64,000 nucleotides of DNA from positions 124,001 to 188,000 of IMG/VR virus record IMGVR_UViG_3300042544_001590. One strand, written 5' to 3'. Shown here in pieces: positions 7,171 through 29,373 of this stretch. The position numbers and the translations under genes are program-made. The notes under the pieces were generated by a model that saw only the letters and a list, made by a program, of their open reading frames with translations, had not been told where the DNA came from and made no database searches. Every line of letters begins with the position of its first letter. Positions within the stretch are counted from its first letter, which is position 1.

Positions 7171-8579
7171 TTATTTTTGACTATAAACCATCCAAACGAC
7201 AAGGACAGATCATTACCGATTCTGAAACCCTTGGTATGATTCGTAGTCATTTTTCAGTCAAGAATGACGGGGCATTTTTCGCCAAGAAGAAAGGACATAG
7301 ATTTGTCAAGGATCGAAAGTATGCCATCACTGCCACCGGATTGTTTGATTTTGGATTTCATGGGGAGATTCTGAAATATCTCAGAGACAATCAGATCACC
7401 GACATATCCCTAACGGATGCTTTCAAAAAGAGATTGAAATGTGGTGTGGGAATCGAGGAATTTTGGAATGATTTGAAATATGATGCGCGGTATTACCAGA
7501 AAGATTCAGTGATTGCTGGTCTGAAAAAAGGATTCGGGACATTTCTATTAGCCACATCTGCTGGGAAAAGTTTGGCTCAAGCCTTACTCATTGAAAATTA
7601 CACTCGAAACGTATCATTTGATACTTTCAAATGTCTCATAGTAGTCCCCGGTTTGTCTCTTGTGAACCAATTACAGGGGGATTTTGAGGATTATGGCGTG
7701 ACATTCACGTATTCAGGATGGACGGGGGGAACAGAACCTCAAGATACTCAAGTTGTGATATGCAATTCTGAGAACCTTCTTTCTCAATTTACCAACAATC
7801 CGTGGATTTTGAGCGTGAATCTGCTCATAACAGATGAGTGTCACAAGGTAGCAAGCGAGAATCAGATTTCCAAAATCATAAACAAAATCCACACACCCAA
7901 CAAATTCGGATTCACGGGAACGCTTTCCGATAAACCCATCGACCAATGGAAAACAATCGGGACATTTGGCTCCGTTATATATGAGAAGAAATCCAAGGAA
8001 CTTAGGGATGAGGGTTATATTTCCGATGTGGAAATCACAGCCCTGCAACTCAATCATCCCAAAACGATAAAATTTAAATATAAAGATGAACTGGAATATC
8101 TATACAAACACGAAAAAAGAAATCAGATCATCGCTAAATTGGCTGATTCAATCAGTGGTAATGTCCTTATCATGGTTAATCATCTTGATCACGGAGATAG
8201 TCTATTATCTCTTATGTCTTCCCGATCTGATAAAAGAGTGTTCTTTGTTAAAGGGGAAATGGAAGTGGAAAAAAGGAAAGAAATAATTGACATGATGGAA
8301 AAGAATGATAACATCATTTGTATTGCCATGGCATCCATCTTTTCAACTGGTATCAATATCAAGAATCTCCCCAATATCATATTTGCGGGACTTGGGAAGT
8401 CATTCATTCGGGTTGTACAATCCATTGGTCGGGGACTCCGGTTGCATGATAACAAATCCAAGCTACGCATCATTGATGTTTCGGATAATTTGAAGTATTC
8501 CATGTCCCATGCGTTACACAGGCAGGAAATATACGATCAAGAGCAAATTTTATGGAAAATTAAGGAGGTGTCGCTGTGA
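7167..8579 (+). CDS. uvsW: SF2 DNA helicase UvsW
   Basis: LATSAGKS Walker A, DECH box, QSIGRGLR motif VI; T4-like synteny. Confidence 0.92.
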   Translation: MIIFDYKPSKRQGQIITDSETLGMIRSHFSVKNDGAFFAKKKGHRFVKDRKYAITATGLFDFGFHGEILKYLRDNQITDISLTDAFKKRLKCGVGIEEFWNDLKYDARYYQKDSVIAGLKKGFGTFLLATSAGKSLAQALLIENYTRNVSFDTFKCLIVVPGLSLVNQLQGDFEDYGVTFTYSGWTGGTEPQDTQVVICNSENLLSQFTNNPWILSVNLLITDECHKVASENQISKIINKIHTPNKFGFTGTLSDKPIDQWKTIGTFGSVIYEKKSKELRDEGYISDVEITALQLNHPKTIKFKYKDELEYLYKHEKRNQIIAKLADSISGNVLIMVNHLDHGDSLLSLMSSRSDKRVFFVKGEMEVEKRKEIIDMMEKNDNIICIAMASIFSTGINIKNLPNIIFAGLGKSFIRVVQSIGRGLRLHDNKSKLRIIDVSDNLKYSMSHALHRQEIYDQEQILWKIKEVSL

Positions 8580-8845
8580 TCGAACGTAGTAAGGAAGACA
8601 TTCAAAAGATCGTTGAAAAGTGGAGTTATCTTTTAAATGCACCGTTATCTGGTAACAAAACAGCAATGTTGATTGAATCACAAGAAAAAACATATACGCT
8701 GGATCAGGTAATAGAAAGTATTGAAGATAAAGTGTTTAAACAATATGTTGAAAATTTCAAGCACGACAATGATCATTATAATCCCGATGGATATATTTCG
8801 GTTTTAGTCAAACATCACATTAACAAACACAATATCAATTTATGA
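8576..8845 (+). CDS. small accessory protein
   Basis: GTG start with AAGGAGGT upstream; coupled on both sides. Confidence 0.6.
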   Translation: MIERSKEDIQKIVEKWSYLLNAPLSGNKTAMLIESQEKTYTLDQVIESIEDKVFKQYVENFKHDNDHYNPDGYISVLVKHHINKHNINL

Positions 8846-9291
8846 CAGAAAAAAATGCCAAGAAACCACATTATGTTAATTCCAAGCTGTTCAAACAGCA
8901 ATTGGTGGAATACTATGAGACGGGAGCAAATCTGGACGAATTGGGAGTTCATCTGATGAACATTGCAGAGGGTTTGTCATATAAAATTAACTTTATTAGA
9001 TATTCTCAAAGCTGGAAATCTGAAATGATCGGGGATGCAGTTCTGAAAATGTATGCGGCTCTGGAAAAGAAATTGTATAACATCGAATCAGACTTCAACC
9101 CATTCTCATATTTCAACCGCATTGCTTGGAATGCTTTCTGCAACCGCATCAAGAAGGAGAACGGACAACACAAGGGTCTGGAGGACTACAAGGAGATGGT
9201 GTATATGGAAAGCATGAGTGGGCCAGATTCCATGGGACATGTTTACGTGAAACCGAATTTGGAGGGGGATGAATATGATGACAATGATTAA
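8842..9291 (+). CDS. gp55: late-transcription sigma factor (T4 gp55-like)
   Basis: HYVN...NIAEGLS..NFIRYS..EMIGDA...NPFSYF..IAWNAF.NRIKKE pattern; position between UvsW and gp47. Confidence 0.88.
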   Translation: MTEKNAKKPHYVNSKLFKQQLVEYYETGANLDELGVHLMNIAEGLSYKINFIRYSQSWKSEMIGDAVLKMYAALEKKLYNIESDFNPFSYFNRIAWNAFCNRIKKENGQHKGLEDYKEMVYMESMSGPDSMGHVYVKPNLEGDEYDDND

Positions 9292-10303
9292 GAAACCTAA
9301 AATAGCACTATTTTCAGACCTTCATTTGGGTCTGTATGGAAATTCGACAGAGTGGCATGAAATCGCCTTGAAATGGGCTGATTGGATTGTGTCTGATCTG
9401 AAGAAAAAGAAGATTACGGATATATTTTTCCTTGGTGATTTCTTCCACAATCGTTCGGAGATTTCAGTCCAGACAATACATGTTGCATCAGAATTGATTG
9501 CCAAGTTCAAGGATTTCAACCTCTTGATGGTGATAGGAAACCACGATGCGTTCTACAAGAACCGTTCCGATGTCCATAGCTTGGGATTCCTCAAGGGACA
9601 TGATAACATCACCATCATTGATCAGAACTTGGAATTTGATGCATTTAATAAGAAATTGCTATTTGTCCCATGGAATCACGAATTACCCGAAGGTAAATTT
9701 GACTACATCTTTGGTCATTTTGAAATTCAAACATTCCAAATGAACAATTATAAGGTATGTGATCACGGATTCCAAGTCATGGATTTTCTAGCATCCCGAA
9801 CGACTAATGTTTGGAGCGGTCACTTCCACACCAAGAGCATCAAGAAATACAATGAAGGAACGATTCGATATATTGGCAACACATTCCACCACGATTTCAA
9901 CGATTGTGGAGATGACAAGGGTTATCACATTCTGAATCTGGAAGATGATTCCGTCGAATTTGTGAAAAATACGGTGTCTCCTGAATTTATTAAGATTCCC
10001 CTGTCCAAGATCAAGGACTACAAAGCGGAGGATGTGGAAGGAAACATAATCAAGCTAATCATTGACAAAGATGTGGAAGATGATAAGGTGGAGAAGTTCA
10101 AGATTTACCTGTCCAACTTTGCTCCTTTCCGTCTTACCACGGAATACAACGTGGCAACAAAGACAATTGGGGATGTTGAACAGGTGGATTCCATTGATAT
10201 TGTTGGTATGTTTGACGAATTTTATGAACAACTCAAGCTGGACGACGAACAATTAGTAAGAGTGAAGAAAATTAACGATGAATTGTATGACAAATGTAAG
10301 TAA
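9284..10303 (+). CDS. gp47: recombination endonuclease subunit gp47 (Mre11/SbcD-like)
   Basis: Metallophosphoesterase motifs SDLHLG, GDFFH, GNHD, GHFH. Confidence 0.92.
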   Translation: MIKKPKIALFSDLHLGLYGNSTEWHEIALKWADWIVSDLKKKKITDIFFLGDFFHNRSEISVQTIHVASELIAKFKDFNLLMVIGNHDAFYKNRSDVHSLGFLKGHDNITIIDQNLEFDAFNKKLLFVPWNHELPEGKFDYIFGHFEIQTFQMNNYKVCDHGFQVMDFLASRTTNVWSGHFHTKSIKKYNEGTIRYIGNTFHHDFNDCGDDKGYHILNLEDDSVEFVKNTVSPEFIKIPLSKIKDYKAEDVEGNIIKLIIDKDVEDDKVEKFKIYLSNFAPFRLTTEYNVATKTIGDVEQVDSIDIVGMFDEFYEQLKLDDEQLVRVKKINDELYDKCK

Positions 10304-10541
10304 TCCCCTGTTAAGAGCTTTCAAACATACAATAAAAATATCGGAACGCGAAAGAGATGTTCCCATGGAGGAATATATACACAAATATATATTAATGCAT
10401 GGAAGTTGTCTCATAATGGATAGAATCTTGAAAAGAGTTGGCGATAAGGATTCATTAACATTTGATGTTACATATATTTTCAATGATAATCCAACAGATG
10501 ATAAAATTGTCGAAGCTTTGATAAAAATAAACGCATTATAA
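10287..10541 (+). CDS. small accessory protein
   Basis: Starts at the ATG inside junction copy 1. Confidence 0.55.
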   Translation: MTNVSNPLLRAFKHTIKISERERDVPMEEYIHKYILMHGSCLIMDRILKRVGDKDSLTFDVTYIFNDNPTDDKIVEALIKINAL

Positions 10542-10554
10542 TGAAACGAATTGT

Positions 10555-10791
10555 ATGAAAAGTGTAAGTGATTTTGATTTGAAAAAGGTTTTTGTCGAAG
10601 AGGTCACTGAGCGTATTGGTCAACATGTTTTGGCAAGTAAGGTCAGAGATGCTACGATAGAAGATATTGAAAAAGAATTGGAAAATCATAAAAATGGTAA
10701 ATGTGGACATTCTATTGTTGAAGACACATATGGGTGGTTGTATGATTTTAGGGGGTGTGCTATTTGTGGAAAGGGACTTGGAACTGTATGA
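10555..10791 (+). CDS. small Cys/His (Zn-binding-like) accessory protein
   Basis: CGH...CAICGKG; starts at the ATG inside junction copy 2. Confidence 0.6.
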   Translation: MKSVSDFDLKKVFVEEVTERIGQHVLASKVRDATIEDIEKELENHKNGKCGHSIVEDTYGWLYDFRGCAICGKGLGTV

Positions 10792-11708
10792 AAAAAATAA
10801 TTTATAAAAAATTAAAAGGTCAAAATTTCCTTAGCATTGGCAACGATCAGATTGTGATTGATTTTCAATCTGGTTTCAATCTGATCACTGCTAAGAATAT
10901 CGACAACCCTGATCGCCAAAACGGGGGAGGCAAGTCAACATTGGCGGAACTTTTCTATTTCGCCCAATTTGGTAAAACCATCCGTGAAATTAAAAAGGAT
11001 TTCATCATCAACAATATCACCAAAGGAAAAGGTGCTATTGAATTGACGTTTGACGTAGAGACTGATAATGACACTCAGACATACACAATCAAGCGACAAC
11101 TCAAACCAAGCTCTGTAACTCTCTTAAAAGGAGATGAAGATATCACTAAGGATTCAATTGCCAATACTGATAAATTCATCTGTGATCTGATCGGTTCCAA
11201 TCCTGTGATCTGCCGTAGTTGTGATATTCTATCTCTTTCCGATAACATCCCGTTCATGGCGAAGAAACCAGAGGAGAAGCGCAAGTTTATCAATGATATT
11301 TTCTCTTTGGAAGTCTTTGGTAAGATGAGTAATGAATTGAAGAATCTGATTCGTGATAATAAAGGGGAGATGAACATTTCCACTGCAAGATTGGAAGAAC
11401 TTAACCACACTCTGGAAACGCTGAATGATCAGCAAGCGGATTATCTGAAGAAAGTCCAAGAACGGGAAGCAATCCTCGAACAAAAGCGTAAGGAGATCCA
11501 AGAGAAGATCGACGAAACGGAGGAAAAGATTGCTAAAATATCCATAACGGATGTCTCAACAATACAATTGGAGCAAGAGAAGTATCATGAAGCTTGGAGA
11601 AAATTGGATGGGAAGATCGGTCATGTGAACGATGCGATTTCATCCAAGGAGACTTTGAGAAAGTTGAAGGTGAAAGAAATTGAACAAATTGAGAAAGTAA
11701 CAAAATGA
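10788..11708 (+). CDS. gp46: gp46 (Rad50/SbcC-like) N-terminal half
   Basis: GQNFLSIG, Walker A QNGGGKS, Q-loop region then coiled coil; ends EKVTK-stop. Confidence 0.9.
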   Translation: MKKIIYKKLKGQNFLSIGNDQIVIDFQSGFNLITAKNIDNPDRQNGGGKSTLAELFYFAQFGKTIREIKKDFIINNITKGKGAIELTFDVETDNDTQTYTIKRQLKPSSVTLLKGDEDITKDSIANTDKFICDLIGSNPVICRSCDILSLSDNIPFMAKKPEEKRKFINDIFSLEVFGKMSNELKNLIRDNKGEMNISTARLEELNHTLETLNDQQADYLKKVQEREAILEQKRKEIQEKIDETEEKIAKISITDVSTIQLEQEKYHEAWRKLDGKIGHVNDAISSKETLRKLKVKEIEQIEKVTK

Positions 11709-12031
11709 ACACGGAATGTGAAAATTTATCTGGAAGTATAGATATTGGAGAATACCAGAAAATGTTGGCAAGTGTCCCCAAAGCAGCTAAAGAATGTGGG
11801 ATGATTCAACATGAGGATGGATTGTATAAAATGTGGGTTGATTGTAAAGTGATTGATAAATTCACCAAAAACAAATTGTTTGGGGGTAGAAAATATTATT
11901 TTGTTCTCAATATCATGGGAATAACCAAAGAAATTCAAGTGGATGAAAATAATTACTACAATCAATCAGAGATGAATAGAATACATATGTATTCTGAAGA
12001 CCGTAAAACATGGTTCCCAACCAGACAATAA
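11705..12031 (+). CDS. inserted ORF splitting gp46; paralogue of 18603..18935
   Basis: 61 of 72 C-terminal residues identical to the 18603 protein; many DNA differences are synonymous. Confidence 0.8.
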   Translation: MNTECENLSGSIDIGEYQKMLASVPKAAKECGMIQHEDGLYKMWVDCKVIDKFTKNKLFGGRKYYFVLNIMGITKEIQVDENNYYNQSEMNRIHMYSEDRKTWFPTRQ

Positions 12032-12033
12032 AA

Positions 12034-12906
12034 ATGATTAAATGCGACAAATGCCTCCAAGATATTCCCCATACTCATGTGGAACATCTGGAGAAGATGA
12101 AAGAACAATATCAATCGGAATTGGATGATATTGTCAAGGAAATTGATGAATTGAAAGAACAAAAATCTCAATTCCATTCGAAAAAAGAAAAGGTTCAAGC
12201 TAAGGTAGCTGAGTTTCAGGATCAAATCAATGAATCGAAAGTCACCAAACAAAAATTGGAAGGTCTGGAAAACAGTCTCAAGCAATACAAAGATTCTTTG
12301 AACAACTTGAAGCTGGAAGAATTACCTAAACCAAATTTTGAGGAAAGTATTCAAAATACTTGGGTGAGACAAAATACTGAGAATGATAATTTCCGAATGC
12401 TTAAACAGAAATCAGATGATTATGAAATCTGTAAGTTCGTTCTTGGTGAAGAAGGTGTTCGTAGCTTTGTGGTGAAGAGACTTCTTTCCATGATGAACGC
12501 AAGCATTCAGCAATACATCAACGATCTTGGTATGTCCATCCGTTGTAAATTTGACGAATACTTTGATGAGCAGCTTTCCAATGACAAAGGTAAGGAGATT
12601 TCCTACTGGAACTTGAGCGGTGGTGAACGTAGAACAGTTGACCTCGCGTGTGCGTGGGCGTTCAAGGACTTGAAAAGGAAGATTTCGGGAGTGTCATCCA
12701 ATGTGGAATTTTTTGATGAATACCTCGATTCCACCCTAGATTCCACAGGAATTGATAAGTTGATCGAACAAATCAAACAACGAATTGATAGATTTGATCT
12801 TTCTGTTTATGTGATTTCCCATAGAACAGAAACCGCCAAACATGTTACAGGATCAGTAATTGAACTCGCTAAAGAAGGTGGAGTTACTAGGAGAATTTAT
12901 AATTGA
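12034..12906 (+). CDS. gp46: gp46 (Rad50/SbcC-like) C-terminal half
   Basis: Begins MIK-CDKC (zinc hook), coiled coil, LSGGE signature, FFDE Walker B, VISH H-loop. Confidence 0.9.
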   Translation: MIKCDKCLQDIPHTHVEHLEKMKEQYQSELDDIVKEIDELKEQKSQFHSKKEKVQAKVAEFQDQINESKVTKQKLEGLENSLKQYKDSLNNLKLEELPKPNFEESIQNTWVRQNTENDNFRMLKQKSDDYEICKFVLGEEGVRSFVVKRLLSMMNASIQQYINDLGMSIRCKFDEYFDEQLSNDKGKEISYWNLSGGERRTVDLACAWAFKDLKRKISGVSSNVEFFDEYLDSTLDSTGIDKLIEQIKQRIDRFDLSVYVISHRTETAKHVTGSVIELAKEGGVTRRIYN

Positions 12907-12930
12907 CAAATGGAAAAACATGAATAAATC
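12903..12930 (+). promoter_or_regulatory. TTGACA-N16-TAAATC promoter, 5 nt before ATG
   Basis: Direct motif match. Confidence 0.55.
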
Positions 12931-12935
12931 TCTTC

Positions 12936-14129
12936 ATGTTTCAAAAGTCTCCGTTTCCATCTCCTTTTGCTAAGAATCCCTATGCTGTAAAAAACACCAC
13001 CCAAGAACCCCCTAAAAAGGGCAACACTTATTTAAACTTCGGAGCCGATAGAGGGGGTTGTGGACAATGGCGCATAGGTTGGCCTGAATTACATATCAAT
13101 ATGTGTGGATTGGGGGATTCTTCCACCATTACCAAGATGGTTCTCAACAAGGATTGGTATCGGGATGTGAAAACCATCAAGCTCCAACGCCAATGTTCGA
13201 CTCAACAGAAAGAATTCTTTAAATTTCTCAAGAGTATCCAACCAGAATGCGGTTTCAAAATCATCTATGAAGTGGATGATGTGGTATTCCACGAAGAGAT
13301 TCCCGATTACAATTCCTACAAACACGCATTTGCTTCCGATGAGATTCGCCAGAACTGCGTGGACATGATGAACATGGCAGATGAGGTGACGGTGACATGT
13401 AAATACATGCGCGATCTTTTCATTGAGAAAACAGGACAACAAAAGACTTCCGTGATTCCCAACTTCCCTCCCGAATGGTGGATTGGTTCTCATTACAATT
13501 ATGGGAAGGTTATCCAGAACTTTGATAGGAACAAGAAAAAGCCGCGCATCCTCTATTCAGGATCGGGAGCGCACTTTGATGTGAAGAATGTCACGGGACA
13601 GCAAGATGATTTTTCCCATGTCCTGAAATTCATCATCGATAACCGTCATAAATATCAGTTCATTTTCATTGGTGCTTACCCACCTCCCCTGCATCCATAT
13701 ATCGAAAGTAAGGAAATAGAATTTCATCCATGGCAATCCCTGATGGATTATCCGAAGTTCATTGCTTCTTTGAATCCCCAATTGCTTCTTGCACCCCTGA
13801 AGGATATTCCGTTCAACAGGTCAAAGTCTGATATCAAATATATTGAGGGAGCTTGTTTGGGTATCCCCTGTATGGTTCAGGATATGGTGACGTATCAGGA
13901 TGCTCCCGATTTCCTAAAATTCACGGATTCCACCGATTTGGAACAGAAAGTGGAGACAATTCTGAATTGGAAGAACCGTTTCAAGTATTACAAGCTGGTT
14001 CCCGAGTTGAGAAAGCTTGGGGAAAGCAGATTCCTTGAAAGACCGGAGAATATCGGAGCGTTTATGGAAGCCCTGAATACACCATTCGGTGATCCTTCTC
14101 GCAGATTCATGAAATATTGGAATGATTAA
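12936..14129 (+). CDS. glycosyltransferase (GT-B-like, phage type)
   Basis: IIYEVDD, ADEVTVT, LAPLKDIPFNRSKSDIKYIEG patterns. Confidence 0.75.
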   Translation: MFQKSPFPSPFAKNPYAVKNTTQEPPKKGNTYLNFGADRGGCGQWRIGWPELHINMCGLGDSSTITKMVLNKDWYRDVKTIKLQRQCSTQQKEFFKFLKSIQPECGFKIIYEVDDVVFHEEIPDYNSYKHAFASDEIRQNCVDMMNMADEVTVTCKYMRDLFIEKTGQQKTSVIPNFPPEWWIGSHYNYGKVIQNFDRNKKKPRILYSGSGAHFDVKNVTGQQDDFSHVLKFIIDNRHKYQFIFIGAYPPPLHPYIESKEIEFHPWQSLMDYPKFIASLNPQLLLAPLKDIPFNRSKSDIKYIEGACLGIPCMVQDMVTYQDAPDFLKFTDSTDLEQKVETILNWKNRFKYYKLVPELRKLGESRFLERPENIGAFMEALNTPFGDPSRRFMKYWND

Positions 14130-27799: not shown

Positions 27800-28699
27800 A
27801 TGGAATCACCCCTTGACAAATTCATAGAGAATACTAATTATAGTATGTCTCGCGTATTTGCTTGGGTCAACTCAGATTTAGATGGAATTGGATCAACAAT
27901 TCTATTGGGAAACCTTTTCAAAAATTTTGAGTATCGCCACTGTTTCTTCGGTAAATTTGAGGAGCAATACCTACCATGGGCGAAGGAAAACGCGGATGAT
28001 TATGATAAAATCTTCATCGTTGGCATGGTCTTGGATCAAAATCTAATCAAAAAGATTGATGATCACCGTGTCGTGTTCGTTTCAGACCGTCCCGATGACT
28101 TCAAAACATGGGATTCCACCAAGATTCAGGAAGAATGTTCATCTTGCACCAAGATGTTATATAAAAAATTCAAGGAAAAGGTGGAATTTACTAAAGATTT
28201 GAAGAAATTTTTCCTTTACGTTGACGATTATAATTCATATGATCTGAAACATGAGGAAACCAAGTATCTTAATGCTCTTTACCGCAAATCAGGGGGAAAT
28301 CGCTTTATTAATTTTGTAAATCGCTTCTGGAACGGGTTTGATGGGTTCACCACTACCGAAGTTAAGCTTGCTGAAGATTTTTTTGAGAGATTAGACGATG
28401 AATTGGTTGATATTACATTATATTCAGGAGAGTGGGAAGGATATAAGGTCATCTCCACGATTTCCAAGTTCTCCGTGAATGAATTATCCCATGCCATCAT
28501 GGAAAATTACCAAGGAGACGCTGTGATTGTAATGAATGCGGATACTCAATTTGTATCTTTTAGGAAATACAAAGGATCAGAGGTTGACATTGCGAAAATG
28601 GCTGGTAATCTGTGTGACGGTGGTGGCGGCGAATGGGCTGCTGGTGGAAAAATCACCAAGGAATTTTTGAAATTTAGTGAAACATTGAGAGAAATATAA
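27800..28699 (+). CDS. DHH/DHHA1-like phosphoesterase-fold protein (degenerate motifs)
   Basis: SDLDGIGS motif I, DDYNSYD, C-terminal GGGGEWAAGG (cf. GGGHxxAAG). Confidence 0.65.
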   Translation: MESPLDKFIENTNYSMSRVFAWVNSDLDGIGSTILLGNLFKNFEYRHCFFGKFEEQYLPWAKENADDYDKIFIVGMVLDQNLIKKIDDHRVVFVSDRPDDFKTWDSTKIQEECSSCTKMLYKKFKEKVEFTKDLKKFFLYVDDYNSYDLKHEETKYLNALYRKSGGNRFINFVNRFWNGFDGFTTTEVKLAEDFFERLDDELVDITLYSGEWEGYKVISTISKFSVNELSHAIMENYQGDAVIVMNADTQFVSFRKYKGSEVDIAKMAGNLCDGGGGEWAAGGKITKEFLKFSETLREI

Positions 28700-29088
28700 A
28701 TTATGGAACAGATACAATACCCAATTAAAGTTTATGGTTATACTATAAAAGGATTTAATATTGATGGATTTAATATATTTGAAAGAATTTTTGATCATCC
28801 ATCAGATGGAATCGTAGATGAAATAGATGATGGTAAATTTATTAGAAAAACACCAGAGGATGTTGTAAAATTTAAATCTGATAATATGTTTAATTATAAA
28901 AGTTATTGGGTGAATTTTGACGAATTTAAATTATTTATGTGTGAACAAATTAAAGATTTTAAATTGAAGGCTGATGTAGAGTATAAAAATAAAATTGAAA
29001 ATATGAATGAATGTATGGTGGAATTGGAAAAAATAACACCAAGGAATTTTTGAAATTTAGCGAAACACTGAACGAAATTTAAATTATG
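28654..29088 (+). repeat. 52-bp imperfect direct repeat (28654-28705, 29037-29088) flanking ORF 28703..29053
   Basis: 47/52 identical; both copies encode TKEFLKFSETL(R/N)EI-stop-ATT-ATG. Confidence 0.85.
28703..29053 (+). CDS. AT-rich accessory protein between direct repeats
   Basis: 116 aa ORF, AAA/TTT-rich codons. Confidence 0.6.
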   Translation: MEQIQYPIKVYGYTIKGFNIDGFNIFERIFDHPSDGIVDEIDDGKFIRKTPEDVVKFKSDNMFNYKSYWVNFDEFKLFMCEQIKDFKLKADVEYKNKIENMNECMVELEKITPRNF

Positions 29089-29373
29089 AGTAATCCTTCT
29101 CCATCTTCTGCAATTATAGAAAGCGAAAGCGATCACCTATTCCTTTGCTATTGTTCCTTCGTGAACCATCTCAAGGGCAAGAAATTGTCCATCCAGAACG
29201 TTTTCGTGACCACTCTCCAAGAGGAGAAGCTGAAAACGATCCTGAAAACGATATTGTCTCTTGACTCTGATCAGGAACTTGTTAAGGTTTTCCTAGACCA
29301 AGACAACGCTCTTGCAAAGTCGAAATACGTTACGAAATTTATCAGGGGGGAACAGAAGAAGAAAAAGAAATGA
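29086..29373 (+). CDS. hypothetical protein
   Basis: 95 aa, core-like codon usage. Confidence 0.65.
   Translation: MSNPSPSSAIIESESDHLFLCYCSFVNHLKGKKLSIQNVFVTTLQEEKLKTILKTILSLDSDQELVKVFLDQDNALAKSKYVTKFIRGEQKKKKK

What the first reader, a model, noticed from the sequence alone, without database searches (positions are those of the whole stretch)
10280..10800. gp47/gp46 junction iterated three times, each copy supplying the start codon of the next gene
Seen: GAATTGT-ATG-ACAAATGTAAGTAA (gp47 end, ELYDKCK-stop, and start of ORF 10287) recurs as GAATTGT-ATG-AAAAGTGTAAGTGA (reads ELYEKCK-stop in the old frame; start of ORF 10555; 21/24 identical) and as GAACTGT-ATG-AAAA (gp46 start). Inference: two accessory genes were inserted one after another at the coupled gp47/gp46 junction, each time duplicating the junction so translational coupling was preserved. 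This suggests a junction-targeted gene-capture mechanism.
Basis: partly seen in the sequence, partly recalled or inferred. Interest (0 to 1): 0.6.

Follow-up and report, generated by a model that had tools for sequence, protein, structure and literature searches.

The report
Duplicated gene junction from cassette stacking
In a T4-like lake phage, two small accessory genes were stacked between the recombination-nuclease genes gp47 and gp46 by out-of-register recombination at a few shared bases. This left a second copy of the end of gp47 behind: a very clean natural example of a known way phage genomes gain genes, not a new dedicated machine.

Summary
The sequences are as described. Copy 1 (10280-10303, end of gp47) and copy 2 (10548-10571) are true homologues: 21/24 identical, against 0 expected matches in shuffles. 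Copy 3 (10781-10794) is not a copy by descent. It is the conserved C-terminal coding end of orfB (GLGTV-stop, present in orfB relatives in unrelated contexts) abutting the conserved gp46 start.

Seventy-eight related viral contigs show that gp47|gp46 is a hyperplastic junction. Some relatives have a direct ATGA overlap, one has orfA alone, some have orfB plus other ORFs, and at least ten other unrelated cassettes occur, including HNH endonuclease-like ORFs.

The window's joint is chimeric. The orfA stop is followed by the first 11 nt of a gp46 gene. The sequence then switches, at a 6-7 nt microhomology (ACGAAT), into a gp47 tail plus orfB. Independent lake metagenomes contain this joint. One also contains the parental orfA-to-gp46 form, which diverges exactly at the predicted breakpoint.

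Two further junction duplications were found:
- 62 nt at window 28647/29030.
- A perfect 31 nt in a relative, with the matching empty site also recovered.

Best reading: a scar of microhomology-mediated recombination, filtered by selection for an intact upstream stop and downstream start. A dedicated capture mechanism is not supported, but not fully excluded.

The parts
8842..9291 (+). gp55-like late sigma factor. Its acidic 3' tail holds the embedded ATG (9269) that starts gp47 (23-nt overlap).
   Evidence: ORF list; relatives use the same embedded ATGs for gp47 or for inserted ORFs.
9269..10303 (+). gp47 (Mre11/SbcD-like recombination nuclease subunit).
   Evidence: Weak Pfam Metallophos_2 hit; tblastn to gp47 of T4-like phages.
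10280..10303 (+). Copy 1: the functional gp47 3' tail (ELYDKCK-stop), with embedded ATG at 10287.
   Evidence: the tail is conserved across the clade.
10287..10541 (+). orfA, an 84-aa accessory cassette of unknown function. Its start codon and first codons are donated by the gp47 tail.
   Evidence: Occurs alone in L010 and in other contexts in L091 and L092; no family match.
10541..10551 (+). Remnant of the first 11 nt of a gp46 gene, left after orfA.
   Evidence: Matches the gp46 starts of L003 and L010; alignment; a variant contig in X5 continues as gp46 from 10552.
10541..10558 (+). 5-codon relay ORF (MKRIV-stop). It overlaps the orfA stop (TAATG) and the orfB start (ATGA).
   Evidence: Read directly from the sequence; any function is inferred.
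10546..10551 (+). Crossover microhomology ACGAAT, shared by the gp46 5' end and the gp47 tail.
10548..10571 (+). Copy 2: non-functional remnant of a second gp47 tail allele. It supplies the ATG (10555) and first 6 codons of orfB.
   Evidence: identical downstream continuation to the L004 gp47>orfB junction.
10555..10791 (+). orfB, a 78-aa Cys/His-containing accessory cassette of unknown function.
   Evidence: Homologues have invariant C50, H52, C68, C71 and a GLGTV end but differing N-termini; an 81%-identical homologue lies in a DnaB-primase-HIRAN context.
10781..10794 (+). 'Copy 3': the native orfB 3' coding end plus the gp46 ATGA start. A look-alike, not a duplicate.
10788..11708 (+). gp46 N-terminal half (Rad50-like ATPase head and ascending coiled coil).
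   Evidence: Pfam AAA_23 and SMC_N; contiguous with the C-terminal half in relatives.
11705..12031 (+). orfC, a 108-aa cassette that splits gp46 just before its CxxC hook.
12034..12906 (+). gp46 C-terminal half, starting MIKCDKC.
28647..28708 (+). Second case, copy 1: 3' tail of a 299-aa DHH-like gene, plus TAA, a 3-nt spacer and the ATG of an inserted 116-aa ORF.
28703..29053 (+). Second case: the inserted 116-aa ORF, absent from relatives with the empty site.
   Evidence: L118, L124, L139, L140 have the 299-aa gene followed directly by the 95-aa ORF.
29030..29091 (+). Second case, copy 2 (51/62 identical). It supplies the stop of the insert (frame-shifted) and the ATG of the 95-aa ORF at 29086.

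Best explanation
The repeated junction is a recombination scar in a hyperplastic gene junction of a T4-like freshwater phage.

In this clade the last codons of gp47 (ELYEKCK-stop) contain an out-of-frame ATG (tATGa in the Leu-Tyr-Glu codons). Whatever gene comes next starts there, so unrelated cassettes share a donated start and first few codons.

The window's arrangement arose when two versions of the interval were joined out of register. One was a gp47-orfA-gp46 version. The other had orfB directly after gp47; L004 keeps that left junction, but an orfB-to-gp46 parent has not been seen. The crossover fell in a 6-7 nt microhomology (ACGAAT) between codons 2-4 of gp46 and codons -8/-7 of gp47. 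The product keeps 11 nt of gp46, then a second gp47 tail, then orfB.

Shown: the chimeric joint, the natural parental-type junctions, co-occurrence of one parent in the same lake, and the physical reality of the joint.

Inferred: the enzymology (template switching or break-join during recombination-dependent replication of co-infecting genomes). Also inferred: only products that keep the upstream stop and recreate a downstream start survive, which makes junction duplications the typical visible outcome.

The third 'copy' is the native end of orfB next to the native start of gp46. At most it served as microhomology.
For: - Relatives show every intermediate: direct ATGA junction (L006, L011, L015, L025, L028-30, L034, L035), orfA only (L010), orfB plus other ORFs (L004/5/8), and at least 10 other unrelated cassettes.
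- The base-by-base alignment shows the window following L010 (orfA>gp46) up to 10551, and L004/L012 (gp47 tail>orfB) from 10546-10548 onward.
- Copy 1 ends in TAA like the orfA-linked tail of L010. Copy 2 ends in AAGTGA followed by the orfB sequence, exactly as in L004.
- Run X5 holds both the stacked joint and a diverged contig that leaves the window right after 10551 and continues with the 12 letters of the L010 gp46 start.
- X4, X5 and X7 each span the joint in independent assemblies.
- The orfB N-terminus is donated: homologues elsewhere have different N-termini, and one has its own start after a spacer.
- Independent parallels exist. L091 has a 238-nt orfA insert with a perfect 31-nt target duplication relative to the empty site L099, with microhomologies of 8 and 5 nt. 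Window 28647/29030 has a 62-nt junction duplication around a 116-aa ORF, with empty sites in four relatives.
- No promoter or terminator enrichment at the locus, and no recombinase domain in orfA, orfB or orfC.
- Insert presence changes at least 10 times on a tree of 35 gp47 sequences, including between near-identical gp47 bodies.
Against: - A gp47-orfB-gp46 parent was not found in the collections searched. orfB relatives at this site are followed by two other ORFs.
- The perfect 31-nt duplication in L091 cannot come from a two-parent unequal crossover. It needs two staggered joints in one recipient, so a process that intrinsically duplicates its target (for example repair of staggered breaks) is not excluded.
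- HNH endonuclease-like ORFs occupy the same site in three relatives, so break-induced events may be involved.
- The resemblance of the orfB end to the gp47 tail is rarer than chance (about 0.4%).
- The 3' end of orfA in L010 also resembles the gp47 region upstream of the tail (13/15, post hoc). Older decayed junction copies therefore cannot be ruled out.
- The association between the embedded ATG and presence of an insert is strong in raw counts, but the phylogenetically independent test is underpowered.
Confidence: 0.78

Rival explanations
1. A dedicated junction-targeted capture mechanism: some enzyme recognises coupled stop/start junctions, cuts them with a stagger and inserts ORF cassettes, duplicating the junction each time.
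For: Three independent junction duplications flank inserted ORFs. orfA was caught in two different junctions that both contain TATGAAAAG. All first cassettes dock at the same embedded ATG.
Against: Duplication lengths vary (24 nt plus an 11-nt gp46 remnant, 31 and 62 nt), and single-cassette relatives show only 3-6 nt. The two copies in the window differ at 3/24 positions in the way their cassette-linked alleles differ in relatives. No recombinase, transposase or nuclease domain was found in orfA, orfB or orfC. The third copy is native to orfB.
Confidence: 0.1
2. Break-induced event caused by a free-standing homing endonuclease. HNH ORFs that live at this junction in relatives cut endonuclease-free genomes during co-infection, and sloppy repair from a diverged donor created the stack.
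For: HNH(+HTH)-like ORFs start at or near the same embedded ATG in L007, L026 and L048, in both subclades. RB49 has an HNH ORF next to gene 47. This reading is compatible with the microhomology joint.
Against: No nuclease gene is present in the window's interval. The Pfam HNH scores are below the curated cut-offs. Nothing ties this particular joint to a cut site. This rival concerns the trigger, not the outcome, and does not exclude the best explanation.
Confidence: 0.15
3. PeSL-like shuffling: orfA excised as a mini-circle by recombination between flanking repeats and re-integrated by homologous recombination at another copy of the repeat, which duplicates the repeat.
For: Repeats containing the downstream start codon flank ORFan cassettes, as in PeSL shuffling in RB49/phi1 (PMC2839356). 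The 24-nt repeats could now support excision of orfA.
Against: No promoter or stem-loop terminator lies in or near the repeat. The repeat is coding sequence. The 11-nt gp46 remnant and the 31-nt duplication of the recipient's own sequence in L091 are not what circle integration through a shared repeat gives. This genome's own promoter-type repeat (TAAAAACTAG...) is absent from the locus.
Confidence: 0.07
4. Assembly chimera of two co-occurring strains, or chance similarity in AT-rich DNA.
For: Strains with different cassettes do co-occur in one sample.
Against: The only shared sequence at the joint is 6-7 nt, far below assembler word sizes. Contigs of four runs from different studies span the joint with 0 differences. 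A 15-kb IMG/VR contig is identical. Shuffles give 0.00 expected matches.
Confidence: 0.01

Closest known systems
PeSL-mediated modular shuffling in hyperplastic regions of T4-type phages (Arbiol et al. 2010, PMC2839356; Comeau et al. 2014, PMC4122927)
   Same: Small ORFan cassettes between conserved core genes differ between close relatives. Short repeated sequences that include the start codon of the downstream gene flank the cassettes. No dedicated recombinase is involved, so the phage's own recombination machinery is assumed.
   Different: PeSLs are intergenic promoter plus stem-loop terminator units. Here the repeated unit is the coding 3' tail of the upstream core gene with an embedded out-of-frame ATG. 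The cassettes have no promoter or terminator and are chained by overlapping stops and starts. The joint shows an out-of-register microhomology crossover rather than exchange between equivalent repeats.
Illegitimate or homeologous recombination as the source of phage mosaicism, including 'morons' (framework discussed in PMC2327257, PMC3945230 and PMC1524935; Hendrix/Hatfull literature cited from my own knowledge)
   Same: A gene is present between two genes that are adjacent in relatives. The boundaries lie at gene ends. Short or no homology is found at the joints, and selection filters the survivors.
   Different: Morons carry their own promoter and terminator, and these cassettes do not. Here both parental-type junctions and the product are recovered from nature, and the event duplicated the junction.
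Free-standing homing endonuclease genes of T-even phages (seg/mob; intronless homing; from my own knowledge and PMC1524935)
   Same: Insertion sits between conserved genes, with presence/absence polymorphism among relatives. HNH-like ORFs occupy this very site in L007, L026 and L048.
   Different: orfA, orfB and orfC show no nuclease domain, and no cleavage site is known.
Integron gene-cassette arrays
   Same: Promoter-less ORF cassettes are stacked in series at one docking site and expressed from upstream signals.
   Different: There is no integrase and no attC-like folded site. Docking is translational (an embedded start codon) and the joints are idiosyncratic.
Target-site duplications of transposable elements
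   Same: Direct repeats of recipient sequence flank an insert (31 nt perfect in L091).
   Different: No transposase, no fixed duplication length, microhomology at both joints. In the window the two copies come from diverged alleles.

Membership tests
Hyperplastic region of a T4-like genome | Variable, lineage-specific ORFs located between conserved core genes in otherwise collinear relatives. | tested here: met
   gp47 and gp46 are conserved in 78 loci, while the interval holds 0 to 1.6 kb of unrelated ORFs. RB49 has four ORFs between genes 47 and 46.
Product of microhomology-mediated (illegitimate) recombination | A chimeric joint in which each side matches a different natural junction, with a few shared bases at the switch. 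| tested here: met
   The window follows L010 up to 10551 and L004/L012 from 10546-10548. The shared bases are ACGAAT.
Product of microhomology-mediated (illegitimate) recombination | A parental form exists in the same population. | tested here: met
   A variant contig in X5 continues as the orfA>gp46 junction exactly after 10551. An orfB-side parent with orfB followed directly by gp46 was not found.
PeSL cassette | The repeat contains a sigma-70-type early promoter. | tested here: not met
   18 promoter-like sites against 15.3 expected in 8500-13200, none associated with the repeats. The genome's own promoter-like repeat is absent from genome 130-138 kb.
PeSL cassette | The repeat contains a stem-loop terminator or attenuator. 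| tested here: not met
   No terminator-like site on the + strand in 8500-13200.
PeSL cassette | Repeats flank ORFans and end at the start codon of the downstream gene. | tested here: met
   Copies 1 and 2 flank orfA, and each holds the next start codon.
Free-standing homing endonuclease gene | The inserted ORF encodes a nuclease (HNH, GIY-YIG, LAGLIDADG and so on). | tested here: not met
   orfA, orfB and orfC have no Pfam or PHROG family. The orfB model has no significant PDB match. Relatives L007, L026 and L048 do carry HNH-like ORFs at the site, but below the Pfam cut-offs.
Transposon-type insertion | A transposase or integrase is encoded, and the target-site duplication has a fixed length. 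| tested here: not met
   No such domain was found. Duplications are 24, 31 and 62 nt, and 3-6 nt in single-cassette relatives.
Moron | The insert has its own promoter and terminator flanking the ORF. | tested here: not met
   the ORFs overlap or abut their neighbours' stops and starts.
Integron cassette array | An integron integrase and attC recombination sites. | not tested
   No integrase-like ORF lies in 8-13.5 kb of the window. attC models were not searched.
Translationally coupled operon | Expression of the downstream ORF depends on translation of the upstream ORF. | not testable with these tools
   Only the geometry is seen: overlaps of 17, 1, 4 and 4 nt, and no Shine-Dalgarno-like motif noted by eye. 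No RNA or ribosome data are available.

The most novel reading that the evidence does not exclude
The embedded start codons in the 3' coding tails of core genes (gp55, gp47, the DHH-like gene) may be a selected 'translational docking' architecture. Together with the conserved tail and head sequences acting as linkers, they would form a recombinase-free, promoter-free gene-cassette platform, integron-like in logic. Cassettes would be plugged in, stacked and swapped by microhomology template switching that duplicates the junction, so that every newcomer inherits a coupled start. The platform may be fed by breaks from resident HNH endonucleases.
Probability: 0.18. Interest if true: 0.65.

Novelty: new variant of a known kind. 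Interest (0 to 1): 0.42.

Why it matters
It gives a base-pair-resolved natural record of how a T4-like phage adds genes inside a tightly overlapping operon without breaking it. One parental form and the product coexist in lake metagenomes, and an empty site and its filled site were recovered for a second event.

It also has practical consequences:
- The first few residues of many phage ORFans here are not their own; they are the upstream gene's tail read in another frame.
- Short 'conserved N-terminal motifs' and small bridging ORFs at such sites can be recombination by-products.
- Embedded start codons mark positions where foreign genes are tolerated, which is useful for annotation and for choosing insertion sites in phage engineering.

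Tried and rejected
- Megablast of the region against GenBank phages found nothing. Cultured relatives are only 25-37% identical in gp47.
- Pfam and PHROGs gave no family for orfA, orfB or orfC.
- AlphaFold models were moderate for orfB (pLDDT 77.5; the other four models were poor) and poor for orfA (59.3).
- Foldseek against the PDB gave no match with E of 0.001 or better for orfB.
- ESM Atlas gave only sub-threshold leads: Zn-ribbon-like clusters for orfB, and a ferredoxin-fold FDX-ACB resemblance for a low-confidence orfA model. I make no functional claim from these.
- A search for extra gp47-tail copies (up to 6 mismatches) at the right ends of single-cassette relatives found none. Long duplication is therefore not a universal mark of insertion here.
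- The idea that orfA is a decayed duplicate of the gp47 C-terminus rests on a 13/15 post-hoc match only and is left open.
- The phylogenetically independent test of 'embedded ATG goes with insert' was underpowered: 5 starred pairs, median p 0.5.
- Mosig et al. 2001 (PMC37436), on T4 join-copy recombination and horizontal transfer, is not held. I cite it from memory only.
- Assembly chimera and chance similarity were tested and rejected.
- No alternative genetic code was used.
Full report
CONTEXT. The window is bases 124001-188000 of a complete 207,489-bp IMG/VR virus record with terminal repeats. It is a divergent T4-like phage from lake water. The genes around the finding, all on the + strand, are:
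- gp55-like sigma factor, 8842-9291.
- gp47 (Mre11/SbcD-like), 9269-10303.
- orfA, 10287-10541.
- orfB, 10555-10791.
- gp46 (Rad50-like), present in two pieces (10788-11708 and 12034-12906) separated by orfC (11705-12031).

OBSERVATION.
- Copy 1 (10280-10303) and copy 2 (10548-10571) share 21/24 bases. With up to 3 mismatches the 24-mer matches only these two places in the window, against 0.00 expected in shuffles.
- In a whole-genome scan for local near-repeats, this pair is one of very few that are neither promoter motifs nor tandem coding repeats.
- The 14-mer common to copies 2 and 3 occurs only twice in the genome, both times here.
- Contigs assembled independently from other lake-water runs span the joint without a difference (X4, X5, X7). 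It is therefore not an assembly artefact.

WHAT RELATIVES SHOW. A scan with gp47 returned 78 related loci at 58-100% identity. Mapping gp55, gp47, orfA, orfB and gp46 on them shows that gp47|gp46 is a hyperplastic junction.
- Many relatives have a direct junction in which the gp46 ATG overlaps the gp47 stop (L006, L011, L015, L025, L028-30, L034, L035).
- L010 has orfA alone.
- L004, L005 and L008 have orfB followed by two other ORFs.
- Other relatives carry unrelated cassettes of 55-226 aa. These include HNH(+HTH) endonuclease-like ORFs (L007, L026, L048; weak Pfam hits) and a Phage_zn_bind protein (L039).

The gp47 C-terminus (ELYEKCK-stop) is conserved whether or not an insert is present. 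How the embedded ATG is used:
- In 15 of 18 insert-bearing architectures (inserts of 40 nt or more) the Tyr codon is TAT. This creates an out-of-frame ATG at which the first inserted ORF starts.
- In three distant relatives (L047, L053, L054) gp46 itself starts at that ATG.
- All 12 direct junctions lack it (TAC or TTT).

On a gp47 tree, insert presence changes at least 10 times, even between almost identical gp47 bodies. The formal independent-pairs test is underpowered.

THE JOINT.
- Aligned base by base, the window follows L010 (orfA end, TAATG, gp46 start) up to 10551.
- From 10546-10548 onward it follows the gp47 tail>orfB sequence of L004/L012.
- Bases 10541-10551 are therefore the first 11 nt of a gp46 gene.
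- Bases 10548-10571 are a second gp47 tail.
- The two overlap in a 6-7 nt microhomology (ACGAAT).
- Copy 1 carries the TAA ending seen with orfA in L010. Copy 2 carries the AAGTGA ending and downstream sequence seen with orfB in L004.
- In run X5 a diverged contig matches orfA up to 10551 and then continues with the twelve letters that follow ACGAAT in the L010 gp46. The orfA-only parent therefore coexists with the stacked form, and it diverges exactly at the predicted breakpoint.
- A by-product is a 5-codon ORF (10541-10558) that overlaps the orfA stop and the orfB start. The chain of overlaps from gp47 to gp46 is thus unbroken. Whether this matters for expression is inferred, not shown.

THE THIRD COPY.
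- orfB homologues down to 50-60% identity, in unrelated contexts, all end with the invariant GLGTV-stop, encoded by GGAAC-N-GTA plus a stop.
- In L004 the same ending is followed by a different gene.
- The bases after the ATG are the conserved gp46 N-terminus.
- Copy 3 is therefore a look-alike produced by two independent coding constraints. At most it offered microhomology.
- By contrast, the N-termini of orfB homologues elsewhere differ. The window's first six codons are the gp47 tail read in another frame, so the start codon is donated.

GENERALITY. Junction duplication on insertion recurs.
(i) L091 and L099.
- In L091 an orfA homologue sits in a ligase-region junction unrelated to gp47. 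It is flanked by a perfect 31-nt direct repeat made of the upstream gene's stop and the first 24 nt of the downstream gene.
- L099 is the empty site.
- The joints show 8-nt and 5-nt microhomologies. The left one is the TATGAAAA shared with the gp47 tail.
(ii) Window 28647-28708 and 29030-29091.
- These positions hold a 62-nt repeat (51/62 identical). It comprises the tail of a DHH-like gene, its stop, a 3-nt spacer and an ATG.
- The repeat flanks a 116-aa ORF that is absent from four relatives, where the flanking genes abut.
(iii) gp55|gp47.
- This junction uses embedded ATGs in the gp55 tail in the same way.
Single-cassette relatives show only 3-6 nt repeated at their ends.

MECHANISM.
- The variable duplication lengths, the idiosyncratic microhomologies and the allele-specific differences between the copies all point the same way.
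- So does the absence of any recombinase or nuclease domain in orfA, orfB and orfC, and of promoter/terminator units.
- Together they indicate illegitimate recombination, either template switching or break-join, during recombination-dependent replication of co-infecting relatives.
- Selection for an intact upstream stop and a recreated downstream start then filters the products.
- Because the junction has no spare bases, surviving insertions tend to duplicate it.
- HNH-like ORFs at the same site in relatives could supply breaks, but this is untested.
- The perfect 31-nt case needs two staggered joints in one recipient. A process that intrinsically duplicates its target is therefore not excluded.

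COMPARISON.
- The closest described system is PeSL-mediated shuffling in RB49/phi1 (PMC2839356; PMC4122927). The logic is the same, but the defining promoter and stem-loop are absent here and the repeat is coding.
- This genome has its own promoter-like repeat (TAAAAACTAG..., 114 copies on the + strand). It is concentrated at 0-70 kb and is absent from this locus.
- RB49 also has ORFs between genes 47 and 46.
- I file the finding as a new variant of a known kind of phage genome plasticity.

Noticed in passing
window 10788-12906: gp46 (Rad50-like) is split into two ORFs just before its CxxC zinc-hook motif; the C-terminal half starts MIKCDKC. A 108-aa ORF (orfC, 11705-12031) lies between the halves. 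The gene is contiguous (596 aa) in L015, L025, L034 and L035. Other relatives carry different cassettes at the same split point: L004, L006, a GNAT acetyltransferase in L024, and a short remnant in L027. A Rad50 split at the coiled-coil apex may still work as two chains.
   Followed up: partly
window 28647-28708 and 29030-29091: A 62-nt direct repeat (51/62 identical) consists of the 3' tail of a 299-aa DHH-like gene, plus stop, spacer and ATG. It flanks a 116-aa ORF that is absent from relatives L118, L124, L139 and L140. The same p299|o95 junction holds other inserts of 0.5-1.1 kb in further relatives.
   Followed up: yes
window 9255-9291 (gp55 tail / gp47 start): The acidic tail of gp55 holds several out-of-frame ATGs. 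gp47 starts at one of them (23-nt overlap). In relatives L011, L012, L015, L021, L024, L029 and L031, inserted ORFs of 51-236 aa start there instead and gp47 starts later.
   Followed up: partly
window 33085, 34270, 38163, 39610, 40758; mostly genome 0-70 kb, outside the window: The motif TAAAAACTA[GA], followed by a TACAAT-like box, occurs 114 times on the + strand and once on the - strand of the genome. In 74 of 114 copies an ATG lies exactly 24 nt after the motif start. It looks like this phage's early-promoter cassette with very short or no leaders, and is the likely PeSL counterpart.
   Followed up: partly
L007:3015-3401, L026:4362-4721, L048:5986-6372: Small HNH-like ORFs with a C-terminal HTH occupy the gp47|gp46 junction in three relatives from both subclades. 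They are candidate free-standing homing endonucleases. Their Pfam scores are just below the cut-offs.
   Followed up: partly
L027:3976-3999 and L031:4488-4520: Relatives with only 6-15 nt between gp47 and gp46 keep the embedded ATG. It opens 6-9 codon ORFs that stop 2-3 nt before the gp46 ATG. These may be scars of cassette loss, or relay ORFs.
   Followed up: no
window 10515-10543 vs 10262-10290; L010:4625-4648: The 3' end of orfA (LKKINAL-stop) resembles the gp47 region just upstream of the tail (VKKIND). The match is 13/15 nt in L010 and 12/15 in the window, against about 1.75 chance hits per genome at 2 mismatches or fewer. It could be an older, decayed junction copy or a coincidence.
   Followed up: partly
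genome 1-189 and 207365-207432 (outside the window): A 57-nt unit is tandemly repeated at both ends of the record. It is part of, or the cause of, the reported direct terminal repeat.
   Followed up: no
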